From the NCBI RefSeq assembly GCF_001194135.2, contig NC_068989.1, positions 41,903,549 through 41,936,206 of the forward strand: a stretch of DNA of 32,658 bases. The letters are read 5' to 3'. This DNA is from Octopus bimaculoides. Its lineage: Eukaryota. How positions within the stretch are numbered: position 1 is the stretch's first letter; each line of letters starts with the position of its first letter. The position numbers and the translations under genes were made by a program. Below are positions 5,834 through 31,625 of the stretch, piece by piece. The notes under the pieces were generated by a model. The model was given only the letters and a program-made list of their open reading frames with translations. It did no database searches and had not been told where the DNA came from.

Positions 5834-6254
5834 GGCGATCTTACGATACGAGTCCTAAATATCGGCCTTTTCCGTAAAAAGTGTCTTCGGCGATCTTTAC
5901 CAAAGATCGGTCTTTTCCGTAAAAAGTGTTGGAGAGAAAGAGGGAAACGACGTCGTAAAAGCGAAAGAGATACAGAGAGCGCGATTTCTTTTGAAGGGTT
6001 TAGGGTCAGGCTTAGGGTTAGGGTTTGGGTTTTAGGGTTTGGGTTACGGAATTCCGTCCCTAACCGTAACCGTAACCGTAACCCTAAACACTAACCCTAA
6101 CCCTAAAACCCTAACCCTGACACTAAAACCCTAACCCTAACACCGTAGTGAAGATCTTGAGGGTGTTACGGAAAAGGCCGATCTTTGGTAAAGATCGCCG
6201 AAGACACTTTTTACGGAAAAGGCCGACATTTAGGACTCGTATCAAAAGATCGCC
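5834..6254. mobile_element. Non-autonomous DNA transposon (MITE), Merlin-like, 89-bp TIRs, telomere-like core
   Basis: TIRs at 5834-5922 and 6166-6254 match at 85/89. Perfect 8-bp TSD GGGGATTA at 5826-5833 and 6255-6262. Termini are GGCGA...TCGCC. The superfamily call rests on GG termini plus the 8-bp TSD. Confidence 0.85.
5995..6141. repeat. Head-to-head degenerate telomeric arrays (TTAGGG)n / (CCCTAA)n
   Basis: Four exact TTAGGG plus variants at 5995-6046, the palindrome ACGGAATTCCGT at 6046-6057, and seven exact CCCTAA plus CCGTAA variants at 6058-6141. Confidence 0.9.
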
Positions 6255-7676: not shown

Positions 7677-7932
7677 ACATCGGGAACCATTATCATGTCA
7701 CAAAAAACCCGCTTGTCTTTAAGAAGTATAAACCTTTCTCCCCCTCCTCTTCTTTCTCCTTTCCCATCACTCTCTTTGTCTTTCTCTATCTTCATACATA
7801 CTTATAAATACTTCTCTCTCCCCTCATCTCTCTACATACATACATACATACATACATACATACATACATACACACACACATATATATGTATATACATACA
7901 TATACATATATGTGTATGTATATATGTATATA

Positions 7933-8244
7933 NNNNNNNNNNNNNNNNNNNNNNNNNNNNNNNNNNNNNNNNNNNNNNNNNNNNNNNNNNNNNNNNNNNN
8001 NNNNNNNNNNNNNNNNNNNNNNNNNNNNNNNNNNNNNNNNNNNNNNNNNNNNNNNNNNNNNNNNNNNNNNNNNNNNNNNNNNNNNNNNNNNNNNNNNNNN
8101 NNNNNNNNNNNNNNNNNNNNNNNNNNNNNNNNNNNNNNNNNNNNNNNNNNNNNNNNNNNNNNNNNNNNNNNNNNNNNNNNNNNNNNNNNNNNNNNNNNNN
8201 NNNNNNNNNNNNNNNNNNNNNNNNNNNNNNNNNNNNNNNNNNNN
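7933..8244. other. Assembly gap flanked by (TACA)/(TA) microsatellites
   Basis: 312 N. Confidence 1.
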
Positions 8245-8366
8245 ATATATATATATATATACATACATGTATGTGTGTGCGTATATGTAAGTGTGCACAC
8301 ACATACATGCGTATACATACGCACACAGACAGTCATTTGGAATGACTTGCTTGGTTCCCTAATTCT

Positions 8367-11572: not shown

Positions 11573-13034
11573 TCTATATATATAAAAATGAGAATGTGTG
11601 TCTGTCTGTCTGTCTGTCTGTCTGTGTGAATCCCTAAAACTCGAGAACTACGCAACCAATTTCATTCAAATTTTACACATGCCTTACTTAGGGTTCCAGT
11701 TGTGTTTTAGTCAAAAAAAAATTATTAACTTCTTGCAGAGTTCGAGCACACGGCAACATAATATCTCCTCCACTATTTAAGTATTACGTGTCAAAAGTGA
11801 AACAAAAACACTCATATCAAATACTTTCACTTTAAAAATGAAACTATTCCACTAACTGAAACAATCACATTTCGATACTGTAGTGACAGATACTTTCACA
11901 GANNNNNNNNNNNNNNNNNNNNNNNNNNNNNNNNNNNNNNNNNNNNNNNNNNNNNNNNNNNNNNNNNNNNNNNNNNNNNNNNNNNNNNNNNNNNNNNNNN
12001 NNNNNNNNNNNNNNNNNNNNNNNNNNNNNNNNNNNNNNNNNNNNNNNNNNNNNNNNNNNNNNNNNNNNNNNNNNNNNNNNNNNNNNNNNNNNNNNNNNNN
12101 NNNNNNNNNNNNNNNNNNNNNNNNNNNNNNNNNNNNNNNNNNNNNNNNNNNNNNNNNNNNNNNNNNNNNNNNNNNNNNNNNNNNNNNNNNNNNNNNNNNN
12201 NNNNNNNNNNNNNNNNNNNNNNNNNNNNNNNNNNNNNNNNNNNNNNNNNNNNNNNNNNNNNNNNNNNNNNNNNNNNNNNNNNNNNNNNNNNNNNNNNNNN
12301 NNNNNNNNNNNNNNNNNNNNNNNNNNNNNNNNNNNNNNNNNNNNNNNNNNNNNNNNNNNNNNNNNNNNNNNNNNNNNNNNNNNNNNNNNNNNNNNNNNNN
12401 NNNNNNNNNNNNNNNNNNNNNNNNNNNNNNNNNNNNNNNNNNNNNNNNNNNNNNNNNNNNNNNNNNNNNNNNNNNNNNNNNNNNNNNNNNNNNNNNNNNN
12501 NNNNNNNNNNNNNNNNNNNNNNNNNNNNNNNNNNNNNNNNNNNNNNNNNNNNNNNNNNNNNNNNNNNNNNNNNNNNNNNNNNNNNNNNNNNNNNNNNNNN
12601 NNNNNNNNNNNNNNNNNNNNNNNNNNNNNNNNNNNNNNNNNNNNNNNNNNNNNNNNNNNNNNNNNNNNNNNNNNNNNNNNNNNNNNNNNNNNNNNNNNNN
12701 NNNNNNNNNNNNNNNNNNNNNNNNNNNNNNNNNNNNNNNNNNNNNNNNNNNNNNNNNNNNNNNNNNNNNNNNNNNNNNNNNNNNNNNNNNNNNNNNNNNN
12801 NNNNNNNNNNNNNNNNNNNTTATAATCACAACAGCAAGAAAGTATGTACATGATCACCTTCTTTTACGAAACTTCATTGACTTTCATATATTTATATTGA
12901 TATACATATATATACGTGTGTTTGGGTGCGTGTGTGTATATACATCTCTATATATAAAGATGATGCGTTGTCTAGACGGCGTTTTTAGATTTCATTATTC
13001 TCTTTAACCCGGGCAACGCCGGGTATTTCTGCTA

Positions 13035-13388: not shown

Positions 13389-13983
13389 ATTTAGCTGTTG
13401 TTTGGAACATAAATGAACGTGTTGGAAGATTATAATTTAGGTCAATTTTAAAATAGAAATTTGTATCATAGAACCAAGGGAAGCCGAGGGTTGGTTGGAT
13501 TAATATTAAAAGGGTTAAGCAAGTAAGAGTATAAGGTTCTCATATGACCCCGAACAGAACGCCCGTACATCACTGGGTTTAACCAACGGTTGTAAATAAT
13601 TGCTTGGCACCTTTTCAATGAACTATTTTCATTGCAATCAATCAATTTTAATTGGGATACAGACCAATCAGTTATTACAATTAATTGTCAATTATTTTGC
13701 CTGCCGTACGTAAAAGCACAATATATCTTGGAGTGTTAGCTTCGATTTAGATAAGAGCCAGAATGATAGGAAAATAAAAGGCACGTCTTATAGTTTCAAA
13801 AACTTTATTTTCAGAAAACGTTCAAAGTTCAATTTTATTGATTTAGAATAGGGAACAAACAGCATGTATACTCTACATTGTACAGAAGTTGAAAAACAAA
13901 TAAATTGAAGGTCTTTAACTGAAAGAATTTCTCAAACGAATAGCACAACTAAAATATTCTAATATAGCAAAAGGTCATGAACG

Positions 13984-15663
13984 TTAGCAGATTTCTGAAA
14001 CTAGGTCTGCATCCCAGAAAGCGCGATTGACTTTTAGAAATAACTGCGTTTCTAAATTCATTGGTGTTAAGTATTGCCGAAAATCATTAAAAGCATAACC
14101 TGCTGAACAGAAGAAACGTTCGAAGATGTTGGACGGTGGTAACAAAAATCTACAGTTTAGATATCACCGGGGTGAAATGTATCTTTCTTGTGTTTTTTCA
14201 AACAAGCTGAAACGAAATCATCATCTTCTACAGGTACATAAGACTGTTGTGACCACTAGCAAAGGTTCAGTGTGTGGTGTCCGAGGCAGCCCTACCGTTT
14301 GCCGCCCCCAGACCCCACAAAAAAACACATATTGCTTACAGCAGACCCAAAAGTTCCACCCCTTTAAAAGTGCCGTCCGAGGCCGACCGTCACCTAACTA
14401 CGCTAGTGGTTGCGACGTGTCTGTCACCACTTTCAGCTGATGTAGAGCAGCCACTTCATCCACAGTTAGCTCTGCTTCTGCATGTAAAATTTTCACAACT
14501 CCACTTTCAAAATTTGTGCTGTGCACAATGGCTGCCGATGGAAGCAAATATTTTAAAAACTCCTCGTAAGGATACAATGCGAGAATTTCATCAAAAAGAA
14601 TTCGAGCATCTCCTAAATCTGTTTCTGTTCTTTGCAAGGCGACTGTTACTGAGTGTAACTTACCTAAATTGTCTTTTAGAGTCTGCAGATCATTATGATC
14701 GCGTGGTGTCAACAGATAATCAATCAGCTTTGAATCGTCTTGAAAAGAGTCTAAAAACAGCTTGAGTCGGATGTACCTCTCAATCATGCCATAAGCACAG
14801 GACCAACGGGTTTTATTTCTTTGTATAGGTTGCAAGTGCGTTTTTTCCCGAAGTTTACCCGCAAGTTTTAATGATTTTAGCTTGCCCATCAACATTTGAA
14901 TTTAATCAAGGAGAACTTCCTGCTTGTCGAGATAAGCAGAAACAGCTAGAGTGAATTTATGAGAGACACATTCAACCAATGGTATTCTACACAAATTCGC
15001 TATAGATTTGTTCACTTCAGTATTATCTCCGGCAATAGCTACAACATTTTCTAAATTTTCGTTATAGATACTTAAAACGTACTCTATAAATTCGACATAA
15101 TCAGAGGCAGTGAATGATACTTTATTTACCATTGGCGAAAATGCCAGCAAAACAGTGAAATAGTTATTTTGATAATTGCACGAATATGATGCAAAAAGTC
15201 CAATGAAATACGTCGAACCCTTAGTCCAACCGTCGATTACCAACGAAAGTTTACTTCGAAGGTCATCAGATATCTTCTTTTCCACTGCTCGAGTAAGTTT
15301 CTCCACGTATTTCTTTAATGTCACATTTATCATACTTCCCAAGTTTGTGTACATACGAGTCAGTGGGTTTTCAGTAAGGGAAAATGGTTTTAAACCAATA
15401 CATACCTACTCAATCCAACCATAAACATTTAAGGCCGAGCGACTGGTCACACTATTTCTTGGTGAAAGAAAACTCGCTAAAGATGGTTCTCCAGTTGCTT
15501 ATGTAGTAGAATACTCTGGATGCTGGTTTAGTATATGATTCATAATTTGTCCATCCAGTTCCTTTTTTTTCTGGATCAACTTTTTTTCCACACTTGCATT
15601 TCCATACATGTTCACTGTCTGGTTAAAATATTTTCTGACGATTTGCTCATTTTCACGCGACAT
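13984..15663 (-). pseudogene. hAT-family DDE transposase with BED-like zinc finger, about 500 aa when repaired
   Basis: Manual translation: MSRENEQ..VWKCKCGKK..KKGTGWTN/LMNHILNQHPEY (zinc finger); VIDGWT (D1); AGDN (D2); CVSH; TRWS; then YLNCRFLLPPSNIFERFFCSAG..LTPMNLETQLFLKVNRAFWD..IC* (E and dimerisation-like end). It has several stops and frameshifts and a MITE insertion. Confidence 0.9.
14254..14408 (+). mobile_element. 155-bp hAT-type MITE inserted in the transposase gene
   Basis: Termini CACTAGC...GCTAGTG. 8-bp TSD GTTGTGAC (14246-14253) / GTTGCGAC (14409-14416). Removing it restores the frame DTSQQSYVPVEDDDFVSACLKK. Confidence 0.88.
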
Positions 15664-15815
15664 GGGTTAGTTTAAGATAAAAGATATTTCGCCACAGTTT
15701 AAAATAGGAAATATTTTGCCACTCCACTGATGAAAGTCTGATTCAGTTAATATATTGGAGCAGAATTCAAGATACAACCGCGTTGCAAGCGAAGTTACAA
15801 TTTGATGACTTGAAG

Positions 15816-16100
15816 ACAGAATGTGTGAATCATTCTCGGCAGTCAGAACCAAGCAATTATTTGATAACATACGCAATAACCAATTCCCAAACACGACAGA
15901 ATGTGTGAATCATTCGAGGCGGGTCGTAACCAAGCGTCAACACTCGACTGCGGTTATTTGACAACATACACAATAACCAATACAAAGCATTACAGAATGT
16001 GTATCATTCTCAGCAGTCCGAATCAAGCATCAACACTTAACAACACACAATGATCAAGTGTGAATCATTCTCAGCAATCAGAACAAAGCGTCAACACAAT
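15816..16100. repeat. Subterminal tandem repeats of the hAT (4 imperfect units)
   Basis: ACAGAATGTGTGAATCATTCTCGGCAGTCAGAACCAAGC-like motif at about 15816, 15896, 15992 and 16058. Confidence 0.85.
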
Positions 16101-16374
16101 ACCTCAAATAATAATAGAACGCTGTATTTGCCAATTGAACGTCGAATGAATTATGAGCCATTTGAAAAAACTTTCGCTGACAATGTTACAATTAACTGCA
16201 ATTAATTGCAATTAATTGATATGATAGCTATTAATTATTTAATTGGCAGTACGACTCCAATCAATTAATTGGACCAATATATTTCAATTAATTTTTCATC
16301 AATCAATTTTTTATAGTCCTTGGGTTTAATCCCTCCAGCTACCAGCTGACAGTGACAGGGTTTTAAAAGAGAAC

Positions 16375-16489
16375 GGTGCATCACATGAAATGAAGCCCCG
16401 TGCGCAAGGTCATAATGAGCCGTCAATGCAGGAATCGAACCTACGATTTACATATCGTGAGCCTAACACCCCTGACCACTCGGCCAACT
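16375..16489 (-). mobile_element. tRNA-derived SINE head, family C (truncated)
   Basis: Minus strand has A box TGGCCGAGTGG (16476-16486) and B box GGTTCGATTCC (16431-16441), followed by a CORE-like ATGACCTTGCGCACGGGGCTTCATTTC. There is no acceptor stem, so it is not a tRNA gene. Confidence 0.7.
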
Positions 16490-16769
16490 GAATTCTTGGG
16501 GTAAAAACATATATATATATATATATATATTATCTTATACTGTAGAGAATGAAAAAGTTAGTCACCGTTGTCTTTGTTCACTACCGCCATGACGCTACAG
16601 TGACTAATGTTGTTATCATTGGACAAATACCCCACAGAGAACTTTACTGTCGTAGATGGAGTATAGACAGGAGTTTACTATGAAAGATCAGTGACTGTAA
16701 CCTCAGTGGAGAAATGATTCATGATGGCAACATAAATATGGCTTCTTTGGTGCCCAGAAAAAATACATT

Positions 16770-17493: not shown

Positions 17494-18749
17494 ATTTGAC
17501 AAGACCCTTCAAATCTGTTTGTCTGTCTGTCTGTCTGCCTATCTGTCTGTCAGACTGTCTCTCTCTCTCCTTCCCTCCCTCCCTCTCTCTCCCTCTCTTC
17601 CCTCCCTCTCTCTGCTTCTCTCGCTCTCTCTTTAAGATCATGTCCTGTATTTTTGTTGTAGTTTTGTTGAGTAATACAGAAGATTGAGACCGGCGGCATT
17701 TGTTCACGGAACTGTGTTTTATATTCACGCAATTCATATCCGCCTCTCTCAGGAAACACGTGTACATTATATAAAGCCTGGTTCCTTTTCCATATGTACG
17801 GCGCTCAGACTCCGCATTTTTGCCTATCAAGAGTTATGGAGACTACCTAACCAGGTTGGATATAAGACTTAAATGTAGAACTGGTCTACTGTGCATGAAC
17901 CCTTTGGCAATATGTCGTGCCTTTAGGCGTATCGTTCGAATTTTTATACTCTACTGCATACACACATACACACGTACAGACGAACAGACACGTAAACAGA
18001 CATGCGCGCACGCGCCCACACACTCATGCACACACATACGTAGATACATACATACATACATACATACATACATACATTGAAATATAGATGATGGCTGTCC
18101 AGTCGTGACCGAAGAAGACCGTCACTGACCGTTAAGAATATTTTTCATACATACATGCATACATAGATACATTCATGCATACGTATGTATGTGTGTGTGC
18201 GTGCGCGCGCGCGTCCTCCTTTAGCTCTCTATACATATTAAACTTCATTGCTGTCTACCTTGGTACTGCTTGAAAAATGGAGACTGTGTCCGGTTTCTTG
18301 GCACTCCGTGAAAGAGAAACGATAAAATAAGCACCAGATTTTTGTTTAAATATGAATACTGAAGTTATTGTCATGGATTAAAACTCTTGAAGCCAGTACT
18401 TCAGCACGACCGTAGATCATATTTTTATTGAGAAAAAAAAAATCCATCGAATTACTTCAAAAAGGAAACAGAAAATTCTGAAAAAAATGGGTAGAGGAAG
18501 GAAACAACAAAAAATGGGAACAGTAACAGGTTGTAACAGTAGCTCCAGTTGAAATGGTGTGTTCAATCTCACCTTTGCATAATTGCAAAGGCGTTGCCAC
18601 CGAGAATGGCCAGCGACACTCACTGAAACAGTGACCCTACCTCGCGGATTTCATTTCTCAGACGGGCCGCTGTCACCCCGATTGTAATCGAAGGAAGCGA
18701 ATCAATCTGCTCTGTTGTTTTCTTGAGAACCCCACCATTTCTAAATTTT

Positions 18750-19784
18750 CATGTACATCTGTTGTTACATAGCCCAATGTACCTCTGTTTACAGGTACAA
18801 ATGAAATCCTGTAGCATAGATATACATACTGTAGGTTTCTCATTAGTTCTCTTTAGATGTTCTTTTTCCAATGGCTCCCATGCTGGAAAGTTGACAACCT
18901 TGATAGTCACGTTCAAGACATTTCTCACTTCAGTAAGAAAGGTTCTGGATGCTAAAGCTTCACGACGAAATATGCAATGTGTACCTACAGCAGATGAATT
19001 TTTGTCTTTCACCCTAGTAATGAATACAGACTGTAGACCAAGCATGGCTGGAGCTCCATCAGTGAACACCCCCTGCCAGCGAATCTCACGAAAGTTGGTT
19101 TTCCTGTAAGAAATTTGATACATCATGAAAAATAGCTGTTGCTGTTGTACAATTATCCATAGGGTGACAGAACAACATTTCCTCTTTTACACCGTTGCCT
19201 GATACAAAACGAGCATATACCAGTAGCTGAGAACCCTGAACGATATCAGTCATTTCGTCATACTGGATGGCAAAAACAAGAGAATCTCTTGTTTGGTCGA
19301 GAATTTGATATTTGATGTGTTGAGACAAATCACCGATCCTTCTCTTGACTGTATCGTTTGATAGTGAAATCTAGGAAAGCTTGCTTGCATTATCTTTTCC
19401 CAAAACGAGTTCTGCTGCACGAAGTAGACTTGATTTTATGAGAGACTCTCCGATGTTATGGCTCTTCTTACTCTTTGCAATCAATATGGTGATCTCACAG
19501 GAAGTCTCAATGACCATTGAAGTTTGTTGCCGAAATACTTCACTATCGTCCAACTTAGCTTGCTTCAAGGAATGTCTTTTTGTTTCAAAGAATGACTTGG
19601 GATTGTCGGCAAGGGTAGGATGTGTTGTCCTCAAGTGACGTTCCAAGCGTGAGAGTCGCATTCCATCATGGCCCAAAGTCTTGTAACATATCACACACTG
19701 GGGGACTTCTGTGTCACTCTTTTGGAGGGACACGAATCCAAATCGAATATATTCTTCAAGATACTTCCGTTTCTTTGCACTCAT
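18750..19784 (-). pseudogene. Buster/Charlie-group hAT transposase (ZBED5/ZBED8/FAM200-like), internally deleted
   Basis: MSAKKRKYLEEYIRFGF..PQCVIC..MRLSRLERHLRTTH (BED finger); ISLSNDTVKRRI; FAIQYDEMTDI (D1); FTDGAPAM (D2); THCIFRREALAS. After KVVNF it jumps to a later region, and the EVRWLS block and C-terminal E domain are missing. No matching TIR pair was found. Confidence 0.9.
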
Positions 19785-21006: not shown

Positions 21007-22940
21007 ATGGGATTTACTAAATCAACAGAAATCACAGGTCGCTGGATTGAACACTTCTCTGAGCTCCTAAACCATGAGTCAGTTGTGGATGAAACAGTGA
21101 TTGATACTATGCAACAAAGACCTATCGTTGGCTCCTTAAATTCCACGCCCTCAGTAGATGAGATAATGAGAGCAATAAGTAAATTGAATCTTGGTAGGAC
21201 ACCTGGAAGGGATGGAATTTGTGCTGAGGTCTTGCGATTTGGTGGTGATTACATCATACAGTCCCTTCATGAACTTATTAGTGTAGTCTGGAGGGATGGT
21301 GCAATGCCTAAGGACTGGAAAGGTGCAAATATTCTTCCTCTCTATAAAGGAAAAGGAGCCAGAATAATATGTGGTAACTATAGAGGTATTGCTCTAATAT
21401 GAGATGCTGGCGAGGTTCTGGCAAATATTCTTCTTAGCCGCCTGAATGGGTGTCTCGTAAACGATGTCCTATCTGAATCTCAATGTGGCTTCTGATCTGG
21501 TAGAGGGACAATGAATATGATTTTTACAGCAAGACAGATGCAGGAGAAGTGCTAAGAGCAGAATATAGATCTTGTCCAGATATTTATTGATTTAACCAAG
21601 GCCTTTGATACTGTGAATAGAGCCTTGCTATGGAAAATACTTGGCAGACTTGGATGACCGAATCACTTTATATCTATAATTAAATCATTTCATGGTGGGA
21701 TGGAGGCCTGGGTCAATGTTGGAGGTGGCATGGCGGGACCCATTCTTGTAGAGAATAGTGTCAAGCAGGGCGACATCCTTGCCCCAACTCTCTTCCCTTT
21801 GTACTTTGCTGCTGCTTTTACTCATGCTTTTGCTATGGTTAACTCTCTGGAAATATGTCAGATATCGGTCTTCAGGTCGCCTCTTTAATCTGCGCTGATT
21901 TGCTGCCAATTCAAAAGTCTCTTATTCGTGACCTCCTTTATGCAGATGACTGTGACTTAGTCACTCATACAGTGGATGACATGCAAATACTTATGAATCG
22001 TATTTCTACTTCTTGCAAGGAATTTAGACTCAGCATTAGCCTGGCAAAGACTGTTGTAATGTTCCTGCCTGCACAAGGAAATCCAAACGTGGAACCAGCT
22101 AACTAAGTTGAAGGAACAATACTGAAAGTGATAGAAAAGTTTGTCTACCTGGGCAGCACACTCAACCATTCTTGCTCCCTGGATGATGAAATATCTTTCA
22201 GGCTGCAGAGAGCAACTGATTCCTTCCAGTCTCTTGAGTCTCGTGTCTAGTCTCAGCATGGCATCACAAGACAAACAAAAATTGCTGTGTACCGTGCATG
22301 TGTACTGATATCGCTCTTTTACTCATGCGAGACATGAACCCTTTACAAACGTCATGTAAAGGTCCTTGAACGTTTCCATCAGAGATGTTTGAGACACATT
22401 CTGAATGTTGGCTGGACCTTAAAAACTCCAGACACACAGGTCTTGAAGAAAGCTGATATCTTGAGGCGATGGTGCACAAGCACCGGTTACGTTGGACTGG
22501 ACACCATATTAGAATGAAGGATAGCAGGATCCCAAGACAGATGCTATATGGGGAACTTGTTAGTTGAAAGAGACCCCGGCAAAACCAAGTTTGCGATTTA
22601 CAGACTGTATCAAGTCCTCATTAAAGGCCTGTGATGTGCAGGAGACCGACGAGGAGAGCAATGCCTGTCATCACCACAGATGAAGGAGGCAGGTTAAGGT
22701 GGGGGTCGACACCTTTGAAAGAGCACGTATTCTTCATGAAGAATTTAAGCGTGCTGCTCGAAAGTACACTGCTAGCGTAGTGAATGGAGAAAGCTTGGTT
22801 TGCAATGTTTGCAGTCGTGTATGCAGGGCTCATTAGCCACCAACGGAGCCGCAAATGCAAAATATAAGTTAGTCCTAAAGCGCACAATGTTCCTAAAGGT
22901 CAGCAATGGTCTTCCTCAGTCACGAGTGGACGGCCATCAT
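21007..22940 (+). mobile_element. RTE/BovB-like LINE: reverse transcriptase and 3' end (pseudogenised)
   Basis: TKSTEITGRWIEHFSELLN; PGRDGI; CGNYRGIAL; SQCGF*SGRG; FIDLTKAFDTVNR; VKQGDILAPTLF; LLYADD; FVYLGS; ERFHQRCLRHIL; C-terminal CNVCSRVC..SH. The 3' end GGACGGCCATCAT runs into (GTAT)n. Many stops. Confidence 0.95.
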
Positions 22941-26082: not shown

Positions 26083-26314
26083 CTTTTATTTGTTTCTGTC
26101 ATTAGACTTCGGCCGTACTGAAGAATTATACTTGAACGAATCGACTCCCAGACTTTTCTTTTTTCTCAAAACCTGGTACTTACTCCATCAGCCTGTTTTG
26201 CCGAGCCGCTAGATTATGGAGACGTAAGCATGTCAACACCTGTACCCAAGCAGTGGTAGAAGACAAACACACACACACACACACACATTTATATATATAT
26301 ATATATATATATAT
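26083..26314 (-). mobile_element. SINE family A, 3' half, running into a gap
   Basis: TTTTATTTGTTTCTGTCATTAGACTTCGGCC...CCTGGTACTTACTCCATC..TTTTGCCGAGCCGCT is the reverse complement of the tail of the 2948-3320 copy. Confidence 0.75.
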
Positions 26315-27242
26315 NNNNNNNNNNNNNNNNNNNNNNNNNNNNNNNNNNNNNNNNNNNNNNNNNNNNNNNNNNNNNNNNNNNNNNNNNNNNNNNNNNNNNN
26401 NNNNNNNNNNNNNNNNNNNNNNNNNNNNNNNNNNNNNNNNNNNNNNNNNNNNNNNNNNNNNNNNNNNNNNNNNNNNNNNNNNNNNNNNNNNNNNNNNNNN
26501 NNNNNNNNNNNNNNNNNNNNNNNNNNNNNNNNNNNNNNNNNNNNNNNNNNNNNNNNNNNNNNNNNNNNNNNNNNNNNNNNNNNNNNNNNNNNNNNNNNNN
26601 NNNNNNNNNNNNNNNNNNNNNNNNNNNNNNNNNNNNNNNNNNNNNNNNNNNNNNNNNNNNNNNNNNNNNNNNNNNNNNNNNNNNNNNNNNNNNNNNNNNN
26701 NNNNNNNNNNNNNNNNNNNNNNNNNNNNNNNNNNNNNNNNNNNNNNNNNNNNNNNNNNNNNNNNNNNNNNNNNNNNNNNNNNNNNNNNNNNNNNNNNNNN
26801 NNNNNNNNNNNNNNNNNNNNNNNNNNNNNNNNNNNNNNNNNNNNNNNNNNNNNNNNNNNNNNNNNNNNNNNNNNNNNNNNNNNNNNNNNNNNNNNNNNNN
26901 NNNNNNNNNNNNNNNNNNNNNNNNNNNNNNNNNNNNNNNNNNNNNNNNNNNNNNNNNNNNNNNNNNNNNNNNNNNNNNNNNNNNNNNNNNNNNNNNNNNN
27001 NNNNNNNNNNNNNNNNNNNNNNNNNNNNNNNNNNNNNNNNNNNNNNNNNNNNNNNNNNNNNNNNNNNNNNNNNNNNNNNNNNNNNNNNNNNNNNNNNNNN
27101 NNNNNNNNNNNNNNNNNNNNNNNNNNNNNNNNNNNNNNNNNNNNNNNNNNNNNNNNNNNNNNNNNNNNNNNNNNNNNNNNNNNNNNNNNNNNNNNNNNNN
27201 NNNNNNNNNNNNNNNNNNNNNNNNNNNNNNNNNNNNNNNNNN
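26315..27242. other. Assembly gap
   Basis: 928 N. Confidence 1.
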
Positions 27243-27397
27243 TATATAGGTTTATGTTAGACTGAAAGAAGTTACAGACCTTGTCATTGCTAAGGAGCAA
27301 GAGAGATGACAGAAGTGGATTGGATGGTGTTTAGTCCAAGGCATCTTTTTAAGTTGTGGAATGACAAGAAAACGGAAGAGATTGTCAAAGAAAACAA

Positions 27398-28068: not shown

Positions 28069-28163
28069 TGTATGTATACACACACACGCGTGTGTGTGTC
28101 TGTGTCTGTGTGGGTGTATACATATGTATTCATATATACGCATGTGTATATATATCATTATAT

Positions 28164-28867
28164 NNNNNNNNNNNNNNNNNNNNNNNNNNNNNNNNNNNNN
28201 NNNNNNNNNNNNNNNNNNNNNNNNNNNNNNNNNNNNNNNNNNNNNNNNNNNNNNNNNNNNNNNNNNNNNNNNNNNNNNNNNNNNNNNNNNNNNNNNNNNN
28301 NNNNNNNNNNNNNNNNNNNNNNNNNNNNNNNNNNNNNNNNNNNNNNNNNNNNNNNNNNNNNNNNNNNNNNNNNNNNNNNNNNNNNNNNNNNNNNNNNNNN
28401 NNNNNNNNNNNNNNNNNNNNNNNNNNNNNNNNNNNNNNNNNNNNNNNNNNNNNNNNNNNNNNNNNNNNNNNNNNNNNNNNNNNNNNNNNNNNNNNNNNNN
28501 NNNNNNNNNNNNNNNNNNNNNNNNNNNNNNNNNNNNNNNNNNNNNNNNNNNNNNNNNNNNNNNNNNNNNNNNNNNNNNNNNNNNNNNNNNNNNNNNNNNN
28601 NNNNNNNNNNNNNNNNNNNNNNNNNNNNNNNNNNNNNNNNNNNNNNNNNNNNNNNNNNNNNNNNNNNNNNNNNNNNNNNNNNNNNNNNNNNNNNNNNNNN
28701 NNNNNNNNNNNNNNNNNNNNNNNNNNNNNNNNNNNNNNNNNNNNNNNNNNNNNNNNNNNNNNNNNNNNNNNNNNNNNNNNNNNNNNNNNNNNNNNNNNNN
28801 NNNNNNNNNNNNNNNNNNNNNNNNNNNNNNNNNNNNNNNNNNNNNNNNNNNNNNNNNNNNNNNNNNN
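28164..28867. other. Assembly gap within microsatellite-rich sequence
   Basis: 704 N. Confidence 1.
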
Positions 28868-28996
28868 TATATACACATGCGTACCCGCACACCCACGTAC
28901 ATGCGCCTATATGTATATACTCATCCACCCTCACTTGAAACACACACATACTCACCCACACATTCACCAAAAAATATATACATACCCACATACACG

Positions 28997-29439: not shown

Positions 29440-30385
29440 CTATCTGTAATCTCGGGGGACCAAAAATGTAACAAATATTTAGCCACACGTGGACATGATC
29501 CGAAAAGTTCAGTTCTTGAATTTAGACATGTGGCGGGGTCTAAGCTGCTTTTCAAGATGAATCTGAGCCATCTTTCCATATCACAAACACCGCACTTTCC
29601 GCTGCTGTTGGTGTAAGGCTTGCACTTGGCTAAGATCTTCCAATAAATGTTGTAACTAACACTTTTATCTTTTAAGGACCATATATGACTGGATAATTTG
29701 GTCGTTTTCTTTTTATCCCAGTGCCTGAAGCTCAAGGTGTGATTATTGAACCTGGCATTGAAATTCCCCTCTGTAAGGCCCTTCGTCGAAACTGTATCCT
29801 TAGTGGATATAGAGTCCACGGTAGTTTCATAAATGATGGTCTCGGACATGCAAGCTCCATTTAGCGGGCACAAATTTTTACCCCTGCATGAACAGCTGGT
29901 TTCATATTGTGGTTCTTTGTGTTGTGTGCGATTATATTTTTAAAATTAGTAGTTGAGCTGAAACTGATTTTTAAGTTATGCCTGTTGAAGAGCTTTCTGT
30001 AACTATGGTTGACTGGAAAATGCCTATCTATCAGCGCTAAGAATTACTTGCCTACATTAAAGGTCACTTCGGGTGAGTAGGGGGATGTGAACCAGATAGT
30101 TTTCCTATTCCTATGTTTCCTTTTCTTTATTATTGGACTGGTGGCAGGTGTATAGGTTATTTCCTTGCTAAATCCACTATCTTTAAGATCCTTATTATAT
30201 ACTGGGGCAACGCTATTAAAAATGTCCCTATCGGAGGAGAGGCTAGAAATTCTTTTGCTAATGTTTTAAACACTATGGGGGGATGGCAGGAACCCACATT
30301 AATATAACTAAGTCTATCGTTGGGCTTCCTATAAGATTTATAAATATTCTTATTTAGATCTAAGGATACATCTAGGAAATTGACA
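29440..30385 (-). mobile_element. Penelope-like element (Neptune-type): RT C-terminus, Cys linker and GIY-YIG endonuclease
   Basis: Minus strand: VNFLDVSLDL..YKSYRKPND..YINVGSCHPP; RKTIWFTSPYS..NVGK*FLALIDRHFP..KLFNR..LKISFS; CSCRGKNLCPLNGAC..IIY..GLTEGNF..RFNNH..SFR..LSSHIWSLK..CGVC..E..LNSRTELFGSC. It has stops and frameshifts and runs into a gap. Confidence 0.92.
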
Positions 30386-30657
30386 NNNNNNNNNNNNNNN
30401 NNNNNNNNNNNNNNNNNNNNNNNNNNNNNNNNNNNNNNNNNNNNNNNNNNNNNNNNNNNNNNNNNNNNNNNNNNNNNNNNNNNNNNNNNNNNNNNNNNNN
30501 NNNNNNNNNNNNNNNNNNNNNNNNNNNNNNNNNNNNNNNNNNNNNNNNNNNNNNNNNNNNNNNNNNNNNNNNNNNNNNNNNNNNNNNNNNNNNNNNNNNN
30601 NNNNNNNNNNNNNNNNNNNNNNNNNNNNNNNNNNNNNNNNNNNNNNNNNNNNNNNNN
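30386..30657. other. Assembly gap
   Basis: 272 N. Confidence 1.
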
Positions 30658-30704
<47 letters not shown>

Positions 30705-30705
<1 letters not shown>

Positions 30706-30990
30706 TATCGTTATCACCGCTCTAGTTAGGAATCCAGTTCAGCTAAAACTTTGGTAAATCAGGCAATGAAAAGAATAAAAATTGGAAATAAAAGATGGAA
30801 GTAAAAATCTGTGGCCCTTTCTTCCTCCTGGTACCCTAAACACGTGACTGTTTCTCTTAATGGTTATTAATCCAGCCGTGAAAGTCTGGGAACTAGTGCA
30901 GCTACATTTAAAGCCTACCACATAGTAAACGTGAGTAGATAATCAAGTTCATTGCTAACCTGACATTGAAAGTTAACTAGTTTTGGGAAA
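30705..30990 (+). repeat. ~290-bp unclassified repeat, copy 1, between (CA)n tracts
   Basis: ATCACCGCTCTAGTTAGGAATC...GTGACTGTTTCTCTTAATGG..ATTAATCCAGCCGTGAAAGT...ATCAAGTTCATTGCTAA is shared with 31318-31625. Confidence 0.85.
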
Positions 30991-31029
<39 letters not shown>

Positions 31030-31071
31030 TATGCACGGGTGCGCGCACGCACACACACATACACATACACA

Positions 31072-31238
31072 AACTTTCGGCCTTAGCATAACTACAGACA
31101 CCATCCTGACGGTTGTCAATTTCCTAGATGTGTCCTTAGATCTAAATAAGAATATTTATAAATCTTATAGGAAGCCCAACGATAGACTTAGTTATATTAA
31201 TGTAGGTTCCTACCATCCCTCAGAGTGTTTAAAACATA
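31072..31238 (+). mobile_element. Inverted partial duplicate of the Penelope RT segment
   Basis: FGLSITTDTILTVVNFLDVSLDLNKNIYKSYRKPNDRLSYINVGSYHP. 31114-31219 is the reverse complement of 30280-30385 with 3 mismatches in 106 bp. Confidence 0.9.
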
Positions 31239-31264
31239 CACACACAAACACAGACACGCACGCG

Positions 31265-31302
<38 letters not shown>

Positions 31303-31317
31303 CACACACACACACAT

Positions 31318-31625
31318 TATCATTAGTGGGGATCACCGCTCTAGTTAGGAATCTCGTTCAGCTGCAACCTTGGGAAAAGAATAAAAAATGGAAATGGGAG
31401 ATGAAAGTAAAAGTCTGTAGCCCTGTCATTCACCTGGTTCCCAGTGGCCCTATCTTGCTCCTGGTGCCCTAAACTGGTGACTGTTTCTCTTAATGGGTAT
31501 TAATCCAGCCGTGAAAGTGTAGGAACCGGTGCAGCCACGTTTAACGCCTACCATATACTAAACGTGAGCAGATAATCAAGTTCATTGCTAAACTGACATT
31601 GAAAAGTTAACCAGTTTTAGAAAAT
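31318..31625 (+). repeat. ~290-bp unclassified repeat, copy 2
   Basis: Diverged homologue of 30705-30990, preceded by (CA)n and followed by (CT)n/(CA)n. Confidence 0.85.

What the first reader, a model, noticed from the sequence alone, without database searches (positions are those of the whole stretch)
13576..16330. Complete hAT whose transposase looks oomycete-type: horizontal-transfer candidate
Seen: a TIR- and TSD-bounded 2.74-kb element encoding a repairable transposase of about 500 aa. It has a compact CKCG...GWTNL.NHI..QHP finger, NVYGWIE, LLAFSP, GDN, CVSHKF.LAV, TRWS, AAIVHSTNFESGVVKI and RFLLPPSN.FERFF..LFLKVNR.FWD. From recall, this motif set is characteristic of abundant hAT-like proteins of Phytophthora and Aphanomyces rather than of animal Ac, Buster or Tip100 elements. 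Inference: a patchily distributed hAT lineage, possibly exchanged between marine stramenopiles and a mollusc. Integration is supported by the animal-repeat flanks and a nested host MITE, which argues against contamination.
Basis: partly seen in the sequence, partly recalled or inferred. Interest (0 to 1): 0.75.

Follow-up and report, generated by a model that had tools for sequence, protein, structure and literature searches.

The report
Dead hAT transposon in octopus genome
This is a decayed copy of a cut-and-paste (hAT) jumping gene that has lived in octopus genomes for a long time; its wider family also occurs in water moulds, a diatom and a sponge, but nothing shows that the octopus got it from a water mould.

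Summary
Window 13584-16322 is a 2,739-bp hAT element on the minus strand. It has 8-bp target-site duplications (7/8 match), decayed terminal inverted repeats and a broken ~505-aa transposase gene. A 155-bp insertion with its own repeats and duplication sits inside the gene. An intact 510-aa copy with a perfect duplication lies on an Octopus sinensis chromosome (85% identical).

hAT membership is shown three ways: a profile match to Hermes transposase (E=2e-13), a confident model whose 12 best PDB matches are all Hermes, and conserved BED-finger, D/D/E, CxxH and RW residues.

Named relatives include Phytophthora nicotianae, P. palmivora and the diatom Nitzschia. But they share only 34-40% identity with the octopus protein, no more than a sponge (Ephydatia) cluster does (41%).

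Octopus, Argonauta and two unlabelled sequences form a clade with 100% bootstrap. Its nearest relatives (49-55%) come from unlabelled AT-rich contigs that share the same terminal repeat. The stramenopile sequences fall outside that group.

Contamination is excluded. A direct stramenopile-to-mollusc transfer is not supported. An ancient horizontal origin remains possible but was not tested.

The parts
13576..13583 (.). left 8-bp target-site duplication, GGTTTAAC
   Evidence: Matches 16323-16330 at 7 of 8 positions. Its place is fixed by alignment of the terminal repeat to the intact O. sinensis copy.
13584..16322 (-). whole hAT element, 2,739 bp, gene on the minus strand
   Evidence: blastn against O. 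sinensis L001: window 16296-14409 is 85.5% identical and 14252-13632 is 85.8% identical. The ends were aligned.
13584..13606 (+). terminal inverted repeat at the 3' end of the gene, CAACGGTTGTAAATAATTGCTTG
   Evidence: Extended by one base, it matches 21 of 24 positions of the L001 repeat CAGGGGTTGTAAATAATTGATTGG.
13975..15663 (-). transposase pseudogene of about 505 codons. ATG at 15663; position of the reference stop at 13975.
   Evidence: 83% identical to O. sinensis LOC118767407 by BLASTP over 343 residues and 85% over 459 aligned columns. Lesions: indels near 15621, 15587, 15570, 15545 and 14180; an in-frame 3-nt deletion near 14485; stops at 15499-15501, 15406-15408, 14902-14904, 14164-14166 and 13984-13986. 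The first catalytic Asp (DGW) is at 15232-15234.
15510..15600 (-). BED zinc finger (CxC...HxxxxH), scrambled by four small indels; coordinates approximate
   Evidence: Pfam zf-BED is found in 8 of 8 intact relatives, best E=5e-6. C24, C26, H44 and H49 are invariant or nearly so.
14254..14408 (.). nested 155-bp insertion with 7-bp terminal inverted repeats, CACTAGC...GCTAGTG
   Evidence: Absent from L001 at exactly this point. Coordinates. No second copy was found in the window or in the four loci (L001-L004) held at that point.
14246..14253 (.). target-site duplication of the nested insertion, GTTGTGAC. The second copy, GTTGCGAC, is at 14409-14416.
   Evidence: The empty site in L001 reads ATCACAAC in gene orientation.
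15815..16115 (.). subterminal tandem repeats upstream of the gene, four units spaced 61-94 bp
   Evidence: the repeat finder families D1, D2 and D4. The same region is repeated in L001.
16189..16294 (.). cluster of CAATTAATTG motifs near the 5' end. A further copy lies at 13678-13687 near the other end.
   Evidence: All 7 matches in the 32.6-kb window (at most 1 mismatch) lie inside the element, 6 of them within about 140 bp of an end. 2.7 were expected and 1 of 100 shuffles reached 7.
16300..16322 (-). terminal inverted repeat at the 5' end of the gene, CAAGGACTATAAAAAATTGATTG as reverse complement; decayed
   Evidence: Matches 16 of 23 positions of the L001 repeat and 17 of 23 of the window's left repeat (sequence).
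16323..16330 (.). right 8-bp target-site duplication, GGTTTAAT
   Evidence: Matches 13576-13583 at 7 of 8 positions.

Best explanation
Window 13584-16322 is an old, dead copy of an autonomous hAT cut-and-paste transposon family that is resident in octopod genomes.

By analogy with Hermes, an intact copy would work as follows (inferred). The ~510-aa transposase binds the element ends: the 23-bp terminal repeats that start CAGGG, and probably the subterminal CAATTAATTG motifs through its N-terminal BED finger. It cuts with an RNase-H-fold D/D/E site, helped by the CxxH and RW residues, leaving hairpins on the flanking DNA. It then reinserts the element and creates an 8-bp duplication.

The window copy inserted beside a SINE-like, tRNA-like repeat and then decayed neutrally. 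It picked up frameshifts, stop codons, eroded terminal repeats and a second small transposon inside the gene.

The family belongs to a deep, very large hAT lineage of compact BED-finger transposases. That lineage is found in cephalopods, a sponge, oomycetes, a diatom and many unlabelled environmental eukaryotes. The octopod branch is a lineage of its own within it, not an offshoot of the oomycete branch.
For: **hAT identity**
- The 96-sequence profile A3 hits Hermes transposase at E=1.9e-13. The alignment covers DxW, the second Asp, CxxH, TRWS and the C-terminal S..ER.FS.
- The AlphaFold model of the O. sinensis protein has pLDDT 92. Its 12 best PDB matches are all Hermes, full length, E down to 4.5e-11, TM-score 0.50-0.63.
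- D214, E463, C233 and H236 are invariant, and D145 and W288 at least 90% conserved, across the 96 sequences.
- zf-BED is found in 8 of 8 intact relatives.

**Transposon anatomy**
- Perfect 8-bp duplications and near-perfect terminal repeats occur in L001 (O. sinensis), L003, L004 and L015.
- The window copy has a 7/8 duplication.

**Decay**
- Differences between the window and L001 are nearly even across codon positions (9.3, 7.7 and 11.8%). L001 against L002 gives 17.6, 13.2 and 31.6%, which shows purifying selection between active lineages.
- The lesions are listed.

**Residence in octopods**
- The copies are 83% (O. sinensis), 69-79% (O. vulgaris fragments on three chromosome-sized contigs) and 59% (Argonauta hians) identical to the window fragment.
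- The cephalopod clade has 100% bootstrap.

**Breadth of the lineage**
- 12,939 representative clusters reach E<1e-3 and 1,608 reach E<1e-30.
- Named members are Phytophthora, Nitzschia and Ephydatia.
- All pairwise identities between these labelled branches are 32-47%.
Against: - The hosts of the closest non-cephalopod relatives are unknown, so the sister group of the octopod clade cannot be named.
- No named gastropod, bivalve or squid homologue appeared. Simple vertical inheritance from a molluscan ancestor is therefore not shown either.
- The tree is neighbour-joining on a Kimura distance. Only 100 bootstraps were run, and only one distant outgroup was used.
- Pfam's hAT dimerisation model is matched only weakly: 4 of 8 relatives, best E=0.013.
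- The role of the CAATTAATTG motifs as binding sites is inferred.
- The Argonauta copy has an intact reading frame but no recognisable terminal repeats.
Confidence: 0.85

Rival explanations
1. One reading: the octopod element descends from a horizontal transfer between marine stramenopiles (oomycetes or diatoms) and a mollusc.
For: - Apart from cephalopods, the species-named proteins among the best 120 hits of the consensus search are all stramenopile: two Phytophthora species and Nitzschia.
- No other mollusc or bilaterian was named, so the distribution looks patchy.
- hAT elements are known from the literature to transfer horizontally, for example BuT2 in Drosophila (PMC3942097, title and abstract listed).
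Against: - The octopus protein is only 34-40% identical to the stramenopile proteins. That is no closer than to a sponge cluster at 41%.
- The stramenopiles are not sister to the cephalopod clade.
- The Phytophthora copy has GC3 of 0.65 and no recognisable terminal repeats. The octopod branch and its nearest relatives have GC3 of 0.28-0.37 and, except for L002, share a CAGGG... terminal repeat.
- Repeat-masked animal annotations under-report transposases, so their absence from named proteomes is weak evidence.
- No relative was found in viral contigs, so no vector is in sight.
Confidence: 0.05
2. An ancient horizontal acquisition by the octopod lineage from some other, possibly animal, marine eukaryote. 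The donor would be represented by the unlabelled group at 49-55% identity that shares the terminal repeat.
For: - The clade of cephalopods plus these unlabelled sequences has 79% bootstrap.
- About 115-130 bp of terminal and subterminal sequence is still 75-77% identical to the window.
- Those elements look recently active, with perfect duplications and repeats.
- One identical 507-aa protein was recovered from at least six independent samples.
- No squid, gastropod or bivalve was named among the hits.
Against: - 49-55% protein identity is compatible with very old vertical divergence.
- The hosts are unknown.
- One unlabelled sample (ERZ25074608) carries at least three diverged lineages (P0180, P0216, P0278). 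That pattern speaks for long residence in that host as well.
Confidence: 0.1
3. Contamination or misassembly: the element is not part of the animal genome.
For: None was found. The window has several N gaps, 4,109 N in all.
Against: - The element has a target-site duplication and sits between animal-type repeats and microsatellites.
- It carries a later nested insertion.
- Related copies lie within scaffolds of 33-135 Mb in three octopod assemblies.
Confidence: 0.01

Closest known systems
Hermes transposase and element (hAT superfamily, Musca domestica; PDB 2BW3, 4D1Q, 6DWW, 8EDG)
   Same: - Same overall fold: full-length structural match at TM-score about 0.6.
- Same catalytic layout: DxW, second Asp, CxxH, RW and a C-terminal Glu within S..ER.FS.
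- N-terminal BED finger, 8-bp duplication, and short terminal repeats that start CAG or TAG.
   Different: - Only 13-16% identical over the structural alignments.
- The protein is more compact: about 505 aa against 612.
- Pfam's hAT dimerisation model is barely matched.
- The terminal and subterminal sequences differ (CAGGGGTTGTAAA..., CAATTAATTG motifs).
Octopus sinensis LOC118767407 (P0001) and the element around it on chromosome CM016879.1 (L001)
   Same: - Same family: 85% identical in protein and in DNA.
- Same terminal repeats and the same upstream tandem repeats.
   Different: - L001 is intact: a 510-aa reading frame, a perfect duplication CCTGAGAC, terminal repeats matching at 20 of 23 positions, and no nested insertion.
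- The window copy is dead.
BED-type domain-containing proteins of Phytophthora nicotianae (F443_10683, P0254) and P. palmivora (PHPALM_11737, P0269)
   Same: - Same deep hAT lineage.
- Similar length, about 500-520 aa.
   Different: - 34-38% identical to the octopus protein.
- GC-rich coding sequence, GC3 0.65.
- No terminal repeats recognised around the gene, which seems to contain an intron.
- They lie on a different branch of the tree.
Ephydatia muelleri (freshwater sponge) multi-copy proteins in the 90% cluster of P0257 (for example KAL5509598.1)
   Same: - Same lineage and of animal origin.
- 41% identical to the octopus protein, as close as any stramenopile.
   Different: - A separate branch of the tree.
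- Element ends not examined.
ZBED1-type domesticated hAT genes (Pfam PF27039, ZBED1_RNase-like_helical)
   Same: Precomputed Pfam hits to this helical insertion-domain model occur in many family members.
   Different: The octopod copies are bounded by terminal repeats and duplications and are multi-copy, so they are transposons rather than host genes. No comparison with ZBED1 itself was made.

Membership tests
hAT superfamily of DNA transposons | 8-bp target-site duplication | tested here: met
   The window has GGTTTAAC/GGTTTAAT, a 7/8 match. Perfect 8/8 duplications occur in L001 (CCTGAGAC), L003 (TGGTATGA), L004 (GTAAAGAC) and L015 (CCTCCCCC).
hAT superfamily of DNA transposons | Short terminal inverted repeats beginning YARNG | tested here: met
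   L001 has TAGGGG.../CAGGGG.... L003, L004, L005 and L015 have CAGGG.... The window copy is eroded to CAACG.../CAAGG..., with 17 of 23 positions matching between its two arms.
hAT superfamily of DNA transposons | RNase-H-fold D/D/E catalytic core with CxxH and RW motifs and an all-helical insertion domain | tested here: met
   The profile matches Hermes at E=1.9e-13 across these motifs. D214, E463, C233 and H236 are invariant and D145 and W288 at least 90% conserved in 96 sequences. The window copy keeps DGW, GDN, CVSH, TRWS and FERFF.
hAT superfamily of DNA transposons | Overall fold like a solved hAT transposase | tested here: met
   The model has pLDDT 92. The 12 best Foldseek matches in the PDB are all Hermes, with 478-588 aligned columns and TM-score 0.50-0.63. 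The next hit is the P element transposase at E=3e-3.
hAT superfamily of DNA transposons | N-terminal BED zinc finger | tested here: met
   Pfam zf-BED is found in 8 of 8 intact relatives, best E=5e-6 and above the cut-off for P0001. In the window copy the finger is split by frameshifts.
hAT superfamily of DNA transposons | C-terminal hAT dimerisation domain (Pfam PF05699) | tested here: inconclusive
   The Pfam model matches only 4 of 8 relatives, best E=0.013, and the window fragment not at all. The same stretch does align to the Hermes C-terminus in the profile search (domain E=0.015), and the Foldseek alignments to Hermes span nearly the full length of both proteins.
Ac, Buster or Tip subgroup of hAT | Subgroup-specific duplication consensus (Ac nTnnnnAn, Buster nnnTAnnn; consensus patterns recalled from the literature) and placement with reference transposases | tested here: inconclusive
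   The five duplications (CCTGAGAC, TGGTATGA, GTAAAGAC, CCTCCCCC, GGTTTAAC) fit neither consensus. No Ac, Buster or Tip100 reference sequences were on hand. The only anchors are Hermes (Ac group) and precomputed ZBED1-type Pfam hits.
Horizontally transferred element of oomycete or stramenopile origin | Recipient sequences nest inside the donor clade | tested here: not met
   In the neighbour-joining tree with 100 bootstraps the cephalopod clade has 100% support. The Phytophthora and Nitzschia sequences lie outside the clade, supported at 79%, that holds the cephalopods and their nearest relatives.
Horizontally transferred element of oomycete or stramenopile origin | Similarity far higher than host divergence predicts | tested here: not met
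   The octopus protein is 34-40% identical to the stramenopile proteins and 41% to the sponge cluster. No comparison of synonymous divergence with host genes was possible.
Horizontally transferred element of oomycete or stramenopile origin | Patchy taxonomic distribution | tested here: inconclusive
   The named hosts are only octopods, Ephydatia, Phytophthora and Nitzschia. Most of the hundreds of hits are unlabelled, and transposases are often masked out of annotations.
MITE (the nested insertion at 14254-14408) | Short, non-coding, with terminal repeats and a duplication, and present in many copies | tested here: inconclusive
   It is 155 bp, has 7-bp terminal repeats and a 7/8 8-bp duplication, and is absent from the L001 site. 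No second copy was found in the window or in loci L001-L004. Copy number in the host genome could not be measured with these tools.

The most novel reading that the evidence does not exclude
The octopod branch of this hAT lineage was acquired horizontally, long ago, from a non-molluscan marine eukaryote. This compact BED-hAT lineage as a whole would then move between kingdoms (stramenopiles, sponges, cephalopods), which would explain why no other mollusc shows up among named relatives.
Probability: 0.15. Interest if true: 0.45.

Novelty: new member of a known kind. Interest (0 to 1): 0.2.

Why it matters
As it stands, this is ordinary repeat annotation: one dead hAT copy in an octopus genome.

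Three things have modest value.
- The family is defined by its ends: a terminal repeat of the form CAGGGG-TG--AA-AATTAATTG, an 8-bp duplication, and a BED-finger transposase of about 505 aa.
- An apparently intact copy exists in O. sinensis and could be tested for activity.
- The same deep lineage occurs in oomycetes, a diatom, a sponge and many environmental eukaryotes. That makes it a reasonable data set for a proper study of cross-kingdom transposon spread.

It does not by itself document a horizontal transfer.

Tried and rejected
- **Pfam on the window's own fragments** gave nothing significant: DUF659 at E=0.52 and no hAT dimerisation hit.
- **PDB sequence search with the 8-sequence profile** found nothing. 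Only the 96-sequence profile reached Hermes.
- **Homologue search with the 87-sequence alignment** was swamped by its word prefilter and gave 38 hits with no new names. A single consensus sequence worked better.
- **Three cluster look-ups** gave only one new eukaryotic label, Ephydatia. One member is filed under a Bacteroidota MAG, which is surely mis-binned.
- **A paper search for the sample and run accessions** found nothing.
- **Papers on hAT in Phytophthora or in octopus** gave no description of this family.
- **Guessing the hosts of L002-L004** from shared repeats (blastn, tblastx) or from CpG depletion gave nothing usable.
- **An empty-site search** for the joined flanks inside the window and the two loci held at that point (L001, L002) found no copy that spans the junction.
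- **An exact look-up of a window ORF** to identify the source assembly found nothing.
- **Viral contigs** hold no relative.
- **Terminal repeats** could not be found around the Phytophthora, Nitzschia, Argonauta or L002 copies.
- **tRNA and Rfam scans** of the window found no tRNA gene and nothing at Rfam gathering thresholds. The flank gives only a weak tRNA-like match.
Full report
**1. What is in the sequence**

Three stretches stand out.
- The longest run, from NVYGWIE to TDTSQPLA, reads in one frame and is interrupted by two stop codons.
- The N-terminal finger (WKCKCGKK...GWTN / IMNHILNQHPEY) is split between frames.
- The C-terminal block (RFLLPPSNIFERFF...LFLKVNRAFWD) is separated from the rest by extra DNA.

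A search with the 343-aa central part found cephalopod proteins as the best named hits:
- Octopus sinensis LOC118767407 (P0001, 510 aa): 83% identity, E=5e-181.
- Fragments annotated on three O. vulgaris chromosome-sized contigs: 69-79%.
- An Argonauta hians protein (P0004, 504 aa): 59%.

**2. Boundaries and anatomy**

The O. sinensis gene lies on chromosome CM016879.1 (locus L001). blastn aligns window 16296-14409 to L001 at 85.5% and window 14252-13632 at 85.8%. The window DNA in between is missing from L001.

In L001 the element has:
- terminal repeats TAGGGGTTGTAAAAAATTAATTG and CAGGGGTTGTAAATAATTGATTG;
- a perfect 8-bp duplication, CCTGAGAC.

By homology the window's boundaries are as follows.
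- The left repeat CAACGGTTGTAAATAATTGCTTG starts at 13584.
- The right repeat, read as reverse complement, is CAAGGACTATAAAAAATTGATTG and ends at 16322.
- The flanking octamers GGTTTAAC and GGTTTAAT match at 7 of 8 positions.
- The element proper is 2,739 bp.

Two kinds of subterminal repeat are present.
- All seven CAATTAATTG sites in the window (at most one mismatch) lie inside the element, and six are near its ends. 2.7 were expected by chance.
- The region upstream of the gene carries four tandem units spaced 61-94 bp.

The extra DNA inside the gene is a 155-bp insertion at 14254-14408. It has CACTAGC...GCTAGTG termini and its own 8-bp duplication, GTTGTGAC/GTTGCGAC. I could not show that it is multi-copy, so calling it a MITE remains unproven.

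Against the intact reading frame the window copy has:
- five frameshifting indels;
- one in-frame 3-nt deletion;
- four internal stop codons, plus one three codons before the normal stop;
- the nested insertion.

Differences between the window and L001 are spread almost evenly over codon positions (9.3, 7.7 and 11.8%). This indicates neutral decay. The two intact copies L001 and L002 differ mostly at third positions (17.6, 13.2 and 31.6%), which indicates selection on a working transposase.

**3. Is it a hAT?**

Pfam alone is weak. zf-BED is found in 8 of 8 intact relatives, but the hAT dimerisation model matches only 4 of 8, with best E=0.013. Three other lines of evidence make membership solid.
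- A profile of 96 family members hits Hermes transposase at E=1.9e-13. The alignment runs through DxW, the second Asp, CxxH, TRWS and the C-terminal S..ER.FS.
- The AlphaFold model of P0001 has pLDDT 92. Its 12 best PDB matches are all Hermes, nearly full length, with TM-scores of 0.50-0.63.
- The catalytic and zinc-binding residues are invariant or nearly so across the family.

Four further copies have perfect 8-bp duplications and terminal repeats that start CAGGG or TAGGG: L001, L003, L004 and L015. The mechanism I give is inferred from Hermes and was not tested here: cut-and-paste transposition with flank hairpins and an 8-bp staggered insertion.

**4. Who else has it**

An exhaustive profile search found 12,939 representative clusters at E<1e-3 and 1,608 at E<1e-30. 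This is a very large lineage.

A search with the family consensus gave 482 hits at E<1e-10. Among the best 120, the named ones were:
- Octopus sinensis and Argonauta hians;
- Phytophthora nicotianae (P0254) and P. palmivora (P0269);
- the diatom Nitzschia inconspicua (P0273);
- two EukProt entries without a species name.

Aphanomyces was not seen. A cluster look-up added an animal: the 90% cluster of P0257 consists largely of Ephydatia muelleri (sponge) gene models, nine of them named. Most other hits come from unlabelled metagenome or SRA contigs.

**5. Is the octopus element 'oomycete-type'?**

Over 459 well-aligned columns, P0001 has these identities:

| Compared with | Identity to P0001 |
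|---|---|
| Window copy | 85% |
| P0002, unlabelled | 83% |
| P0003, unlabelled | 73% |
| Argonauta hians | 62% |
| Unlabelled group of about 18 | 49-55% |
| Everything else | 44% or less |
| Ephydatia cluster | 41% |
| Nitzschia | 40% |
| P. nicotianae | 38% |
| P. palmivora | 34% |

The two Phytophthora proteins are 39% identical to each other.

In a neighbour-joining tree with 100 bootstraps:
- the five cephalopod-type sequences form a clade with 100% support;
- that clade plus the 49-55% group has 79% support;
- the stramenopiles are scattered elsewhere.

The nearest relatives differ from the Phytophthora copy in several ways.
- They share the terminal repeat, and about 115-130 bp of terminal and subterminal sequence is still 75-77% identical to the window.
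- They are AT-rich, with GC3 of 0.34-0.37 against 0.65 in the Phytophthora copy.
- Three diverged lineages (P0180, P0216, P0278) lie on contigs of 124-436 kb at about 100-120x coverage in one ENA sample. The 18-kb stretch fetched around P0180 holds one reverse-transcriptase gene and otherwise only genes with no Pfam hit.
- I read that as a large eukaryotic host genome, but I could not name the host.

**6. Verdict on horizontal transfer**

Contamination is excluded.

The positive evidence a transfer claim needs is also absent. There is no nesting inside a donor clade, and no similarity beyond what host divergence predicts. The octopod branch is as far from oromycetes as from a sponge.

The presence of diverged copies in Octopus and Argonauta, and the old dead copy described here, speak for long residence in octopods. 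An ancient horizontal origin of the octopod branch from an unknown donor remains possible; I put it at about 0.1-0.15. A direct exchange between stramenopiles and a mollusc is unlikely, at about 0.05.

**7. Novelty and interest**

hAT elements are already reported in octopus repeat annotations, for example as an hAT row in the repeat table of PMC13282606. Horizontal transfer of hAT elements is also well known (PMC3942097, listed).

I found no description of this particular family, so it counts as a new member of a known kind. Interest is low, about 0.2. It would rise only if the unlabelled relatives and a proper divergence test revealed real cross-kingdom movement.

Noticed in passing
window 18749-19784 (minus strand): Two ORFs, at 19371-19784 and 18749-19126. 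The first has a weak BED finger (Pfam zf-BED E=0.0065); the second contains the motif GTHCIFRREALAS. From recall this looks like a second, unrelated hAT remnant of the Buster/ZBED5 type, 2.4 kb from the first.
   Followed up: partly
window 16423-16491 (minus strand): A weak tRNA-like match (Rfam tRNA, 20 bits, E=0.96) with A-box-like and B-box-like sequences lies about 90 bp to the right of the hAT. It is probably the head of a tRNA-derived SINE beside which the hAT inserted. ARAGORN finds no tRNA gene.
   Followed up: partly
window 6058-6141: An interstitial telomere-like (CCCTAA)n array of about 13 units.
   Followed up: no
window 21007-21402 (+), 30157-30717 (-) and 30983-31348 (+): An ORF that looks like a reverse transcriptase, with no Pfam hit at E<=0.01. 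Separately, a peptide VNFLDVSLDLNKNIYKSYRKPNDRLSYINVGS.HP is encoded twice, on opposite strands, next to AC microsatellites. These are probably retroelement fragments.
   Followed up: no
window, several blocks (about 1570-2540, 7930-8270, 11900-12820, 26300-27250, 28160-28870, 30220-30650): 4,109 N in blocks that mostly adjoin microsatellites. These are assembly gaps or masked simple repeats, and they explain the very low GC values.
   Followed up: no
L005-L010 (P0024): One identical 507-aa transposase occurs on seven contigs, six of them shown and each from a different metagenome or SRA sample. The element is 2,424 bp long, and some contigs start or end exactly at a terminal repeat. This is a young, high-copy element in some widespread unidentified organism.
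   Followed up: partly
ENA sample ERZ25074608: L003, L014, L015: Three diverged members of the octopod-related clade (P0180, P0278, P0216) lie on contigs of 124-436 kb at about 100-120x coverage in one assembly. Two of them have perfect 8-bp duplications. The host was not identified.
   Followed up: partly
L013 (Argonauta hians BAAFZT010000027.1, 18301797-18308311): The Argonauta relative has an intact 504-aa reading frame, but no terminal repeats could be recognised around it. Either its ends have diverged or it is an immobilised, possibly domesticated, copy.
   Followed up: partly
cluster of P0277: A member of this eukaryotic transposase family is deposited as 'MAG: hypothetical protein [Bacteroidota bacterium]' (MEY5045776.1). 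It is most likely a eukaryotic contig mis-binned into a bacterial genome.
   Followed up: no
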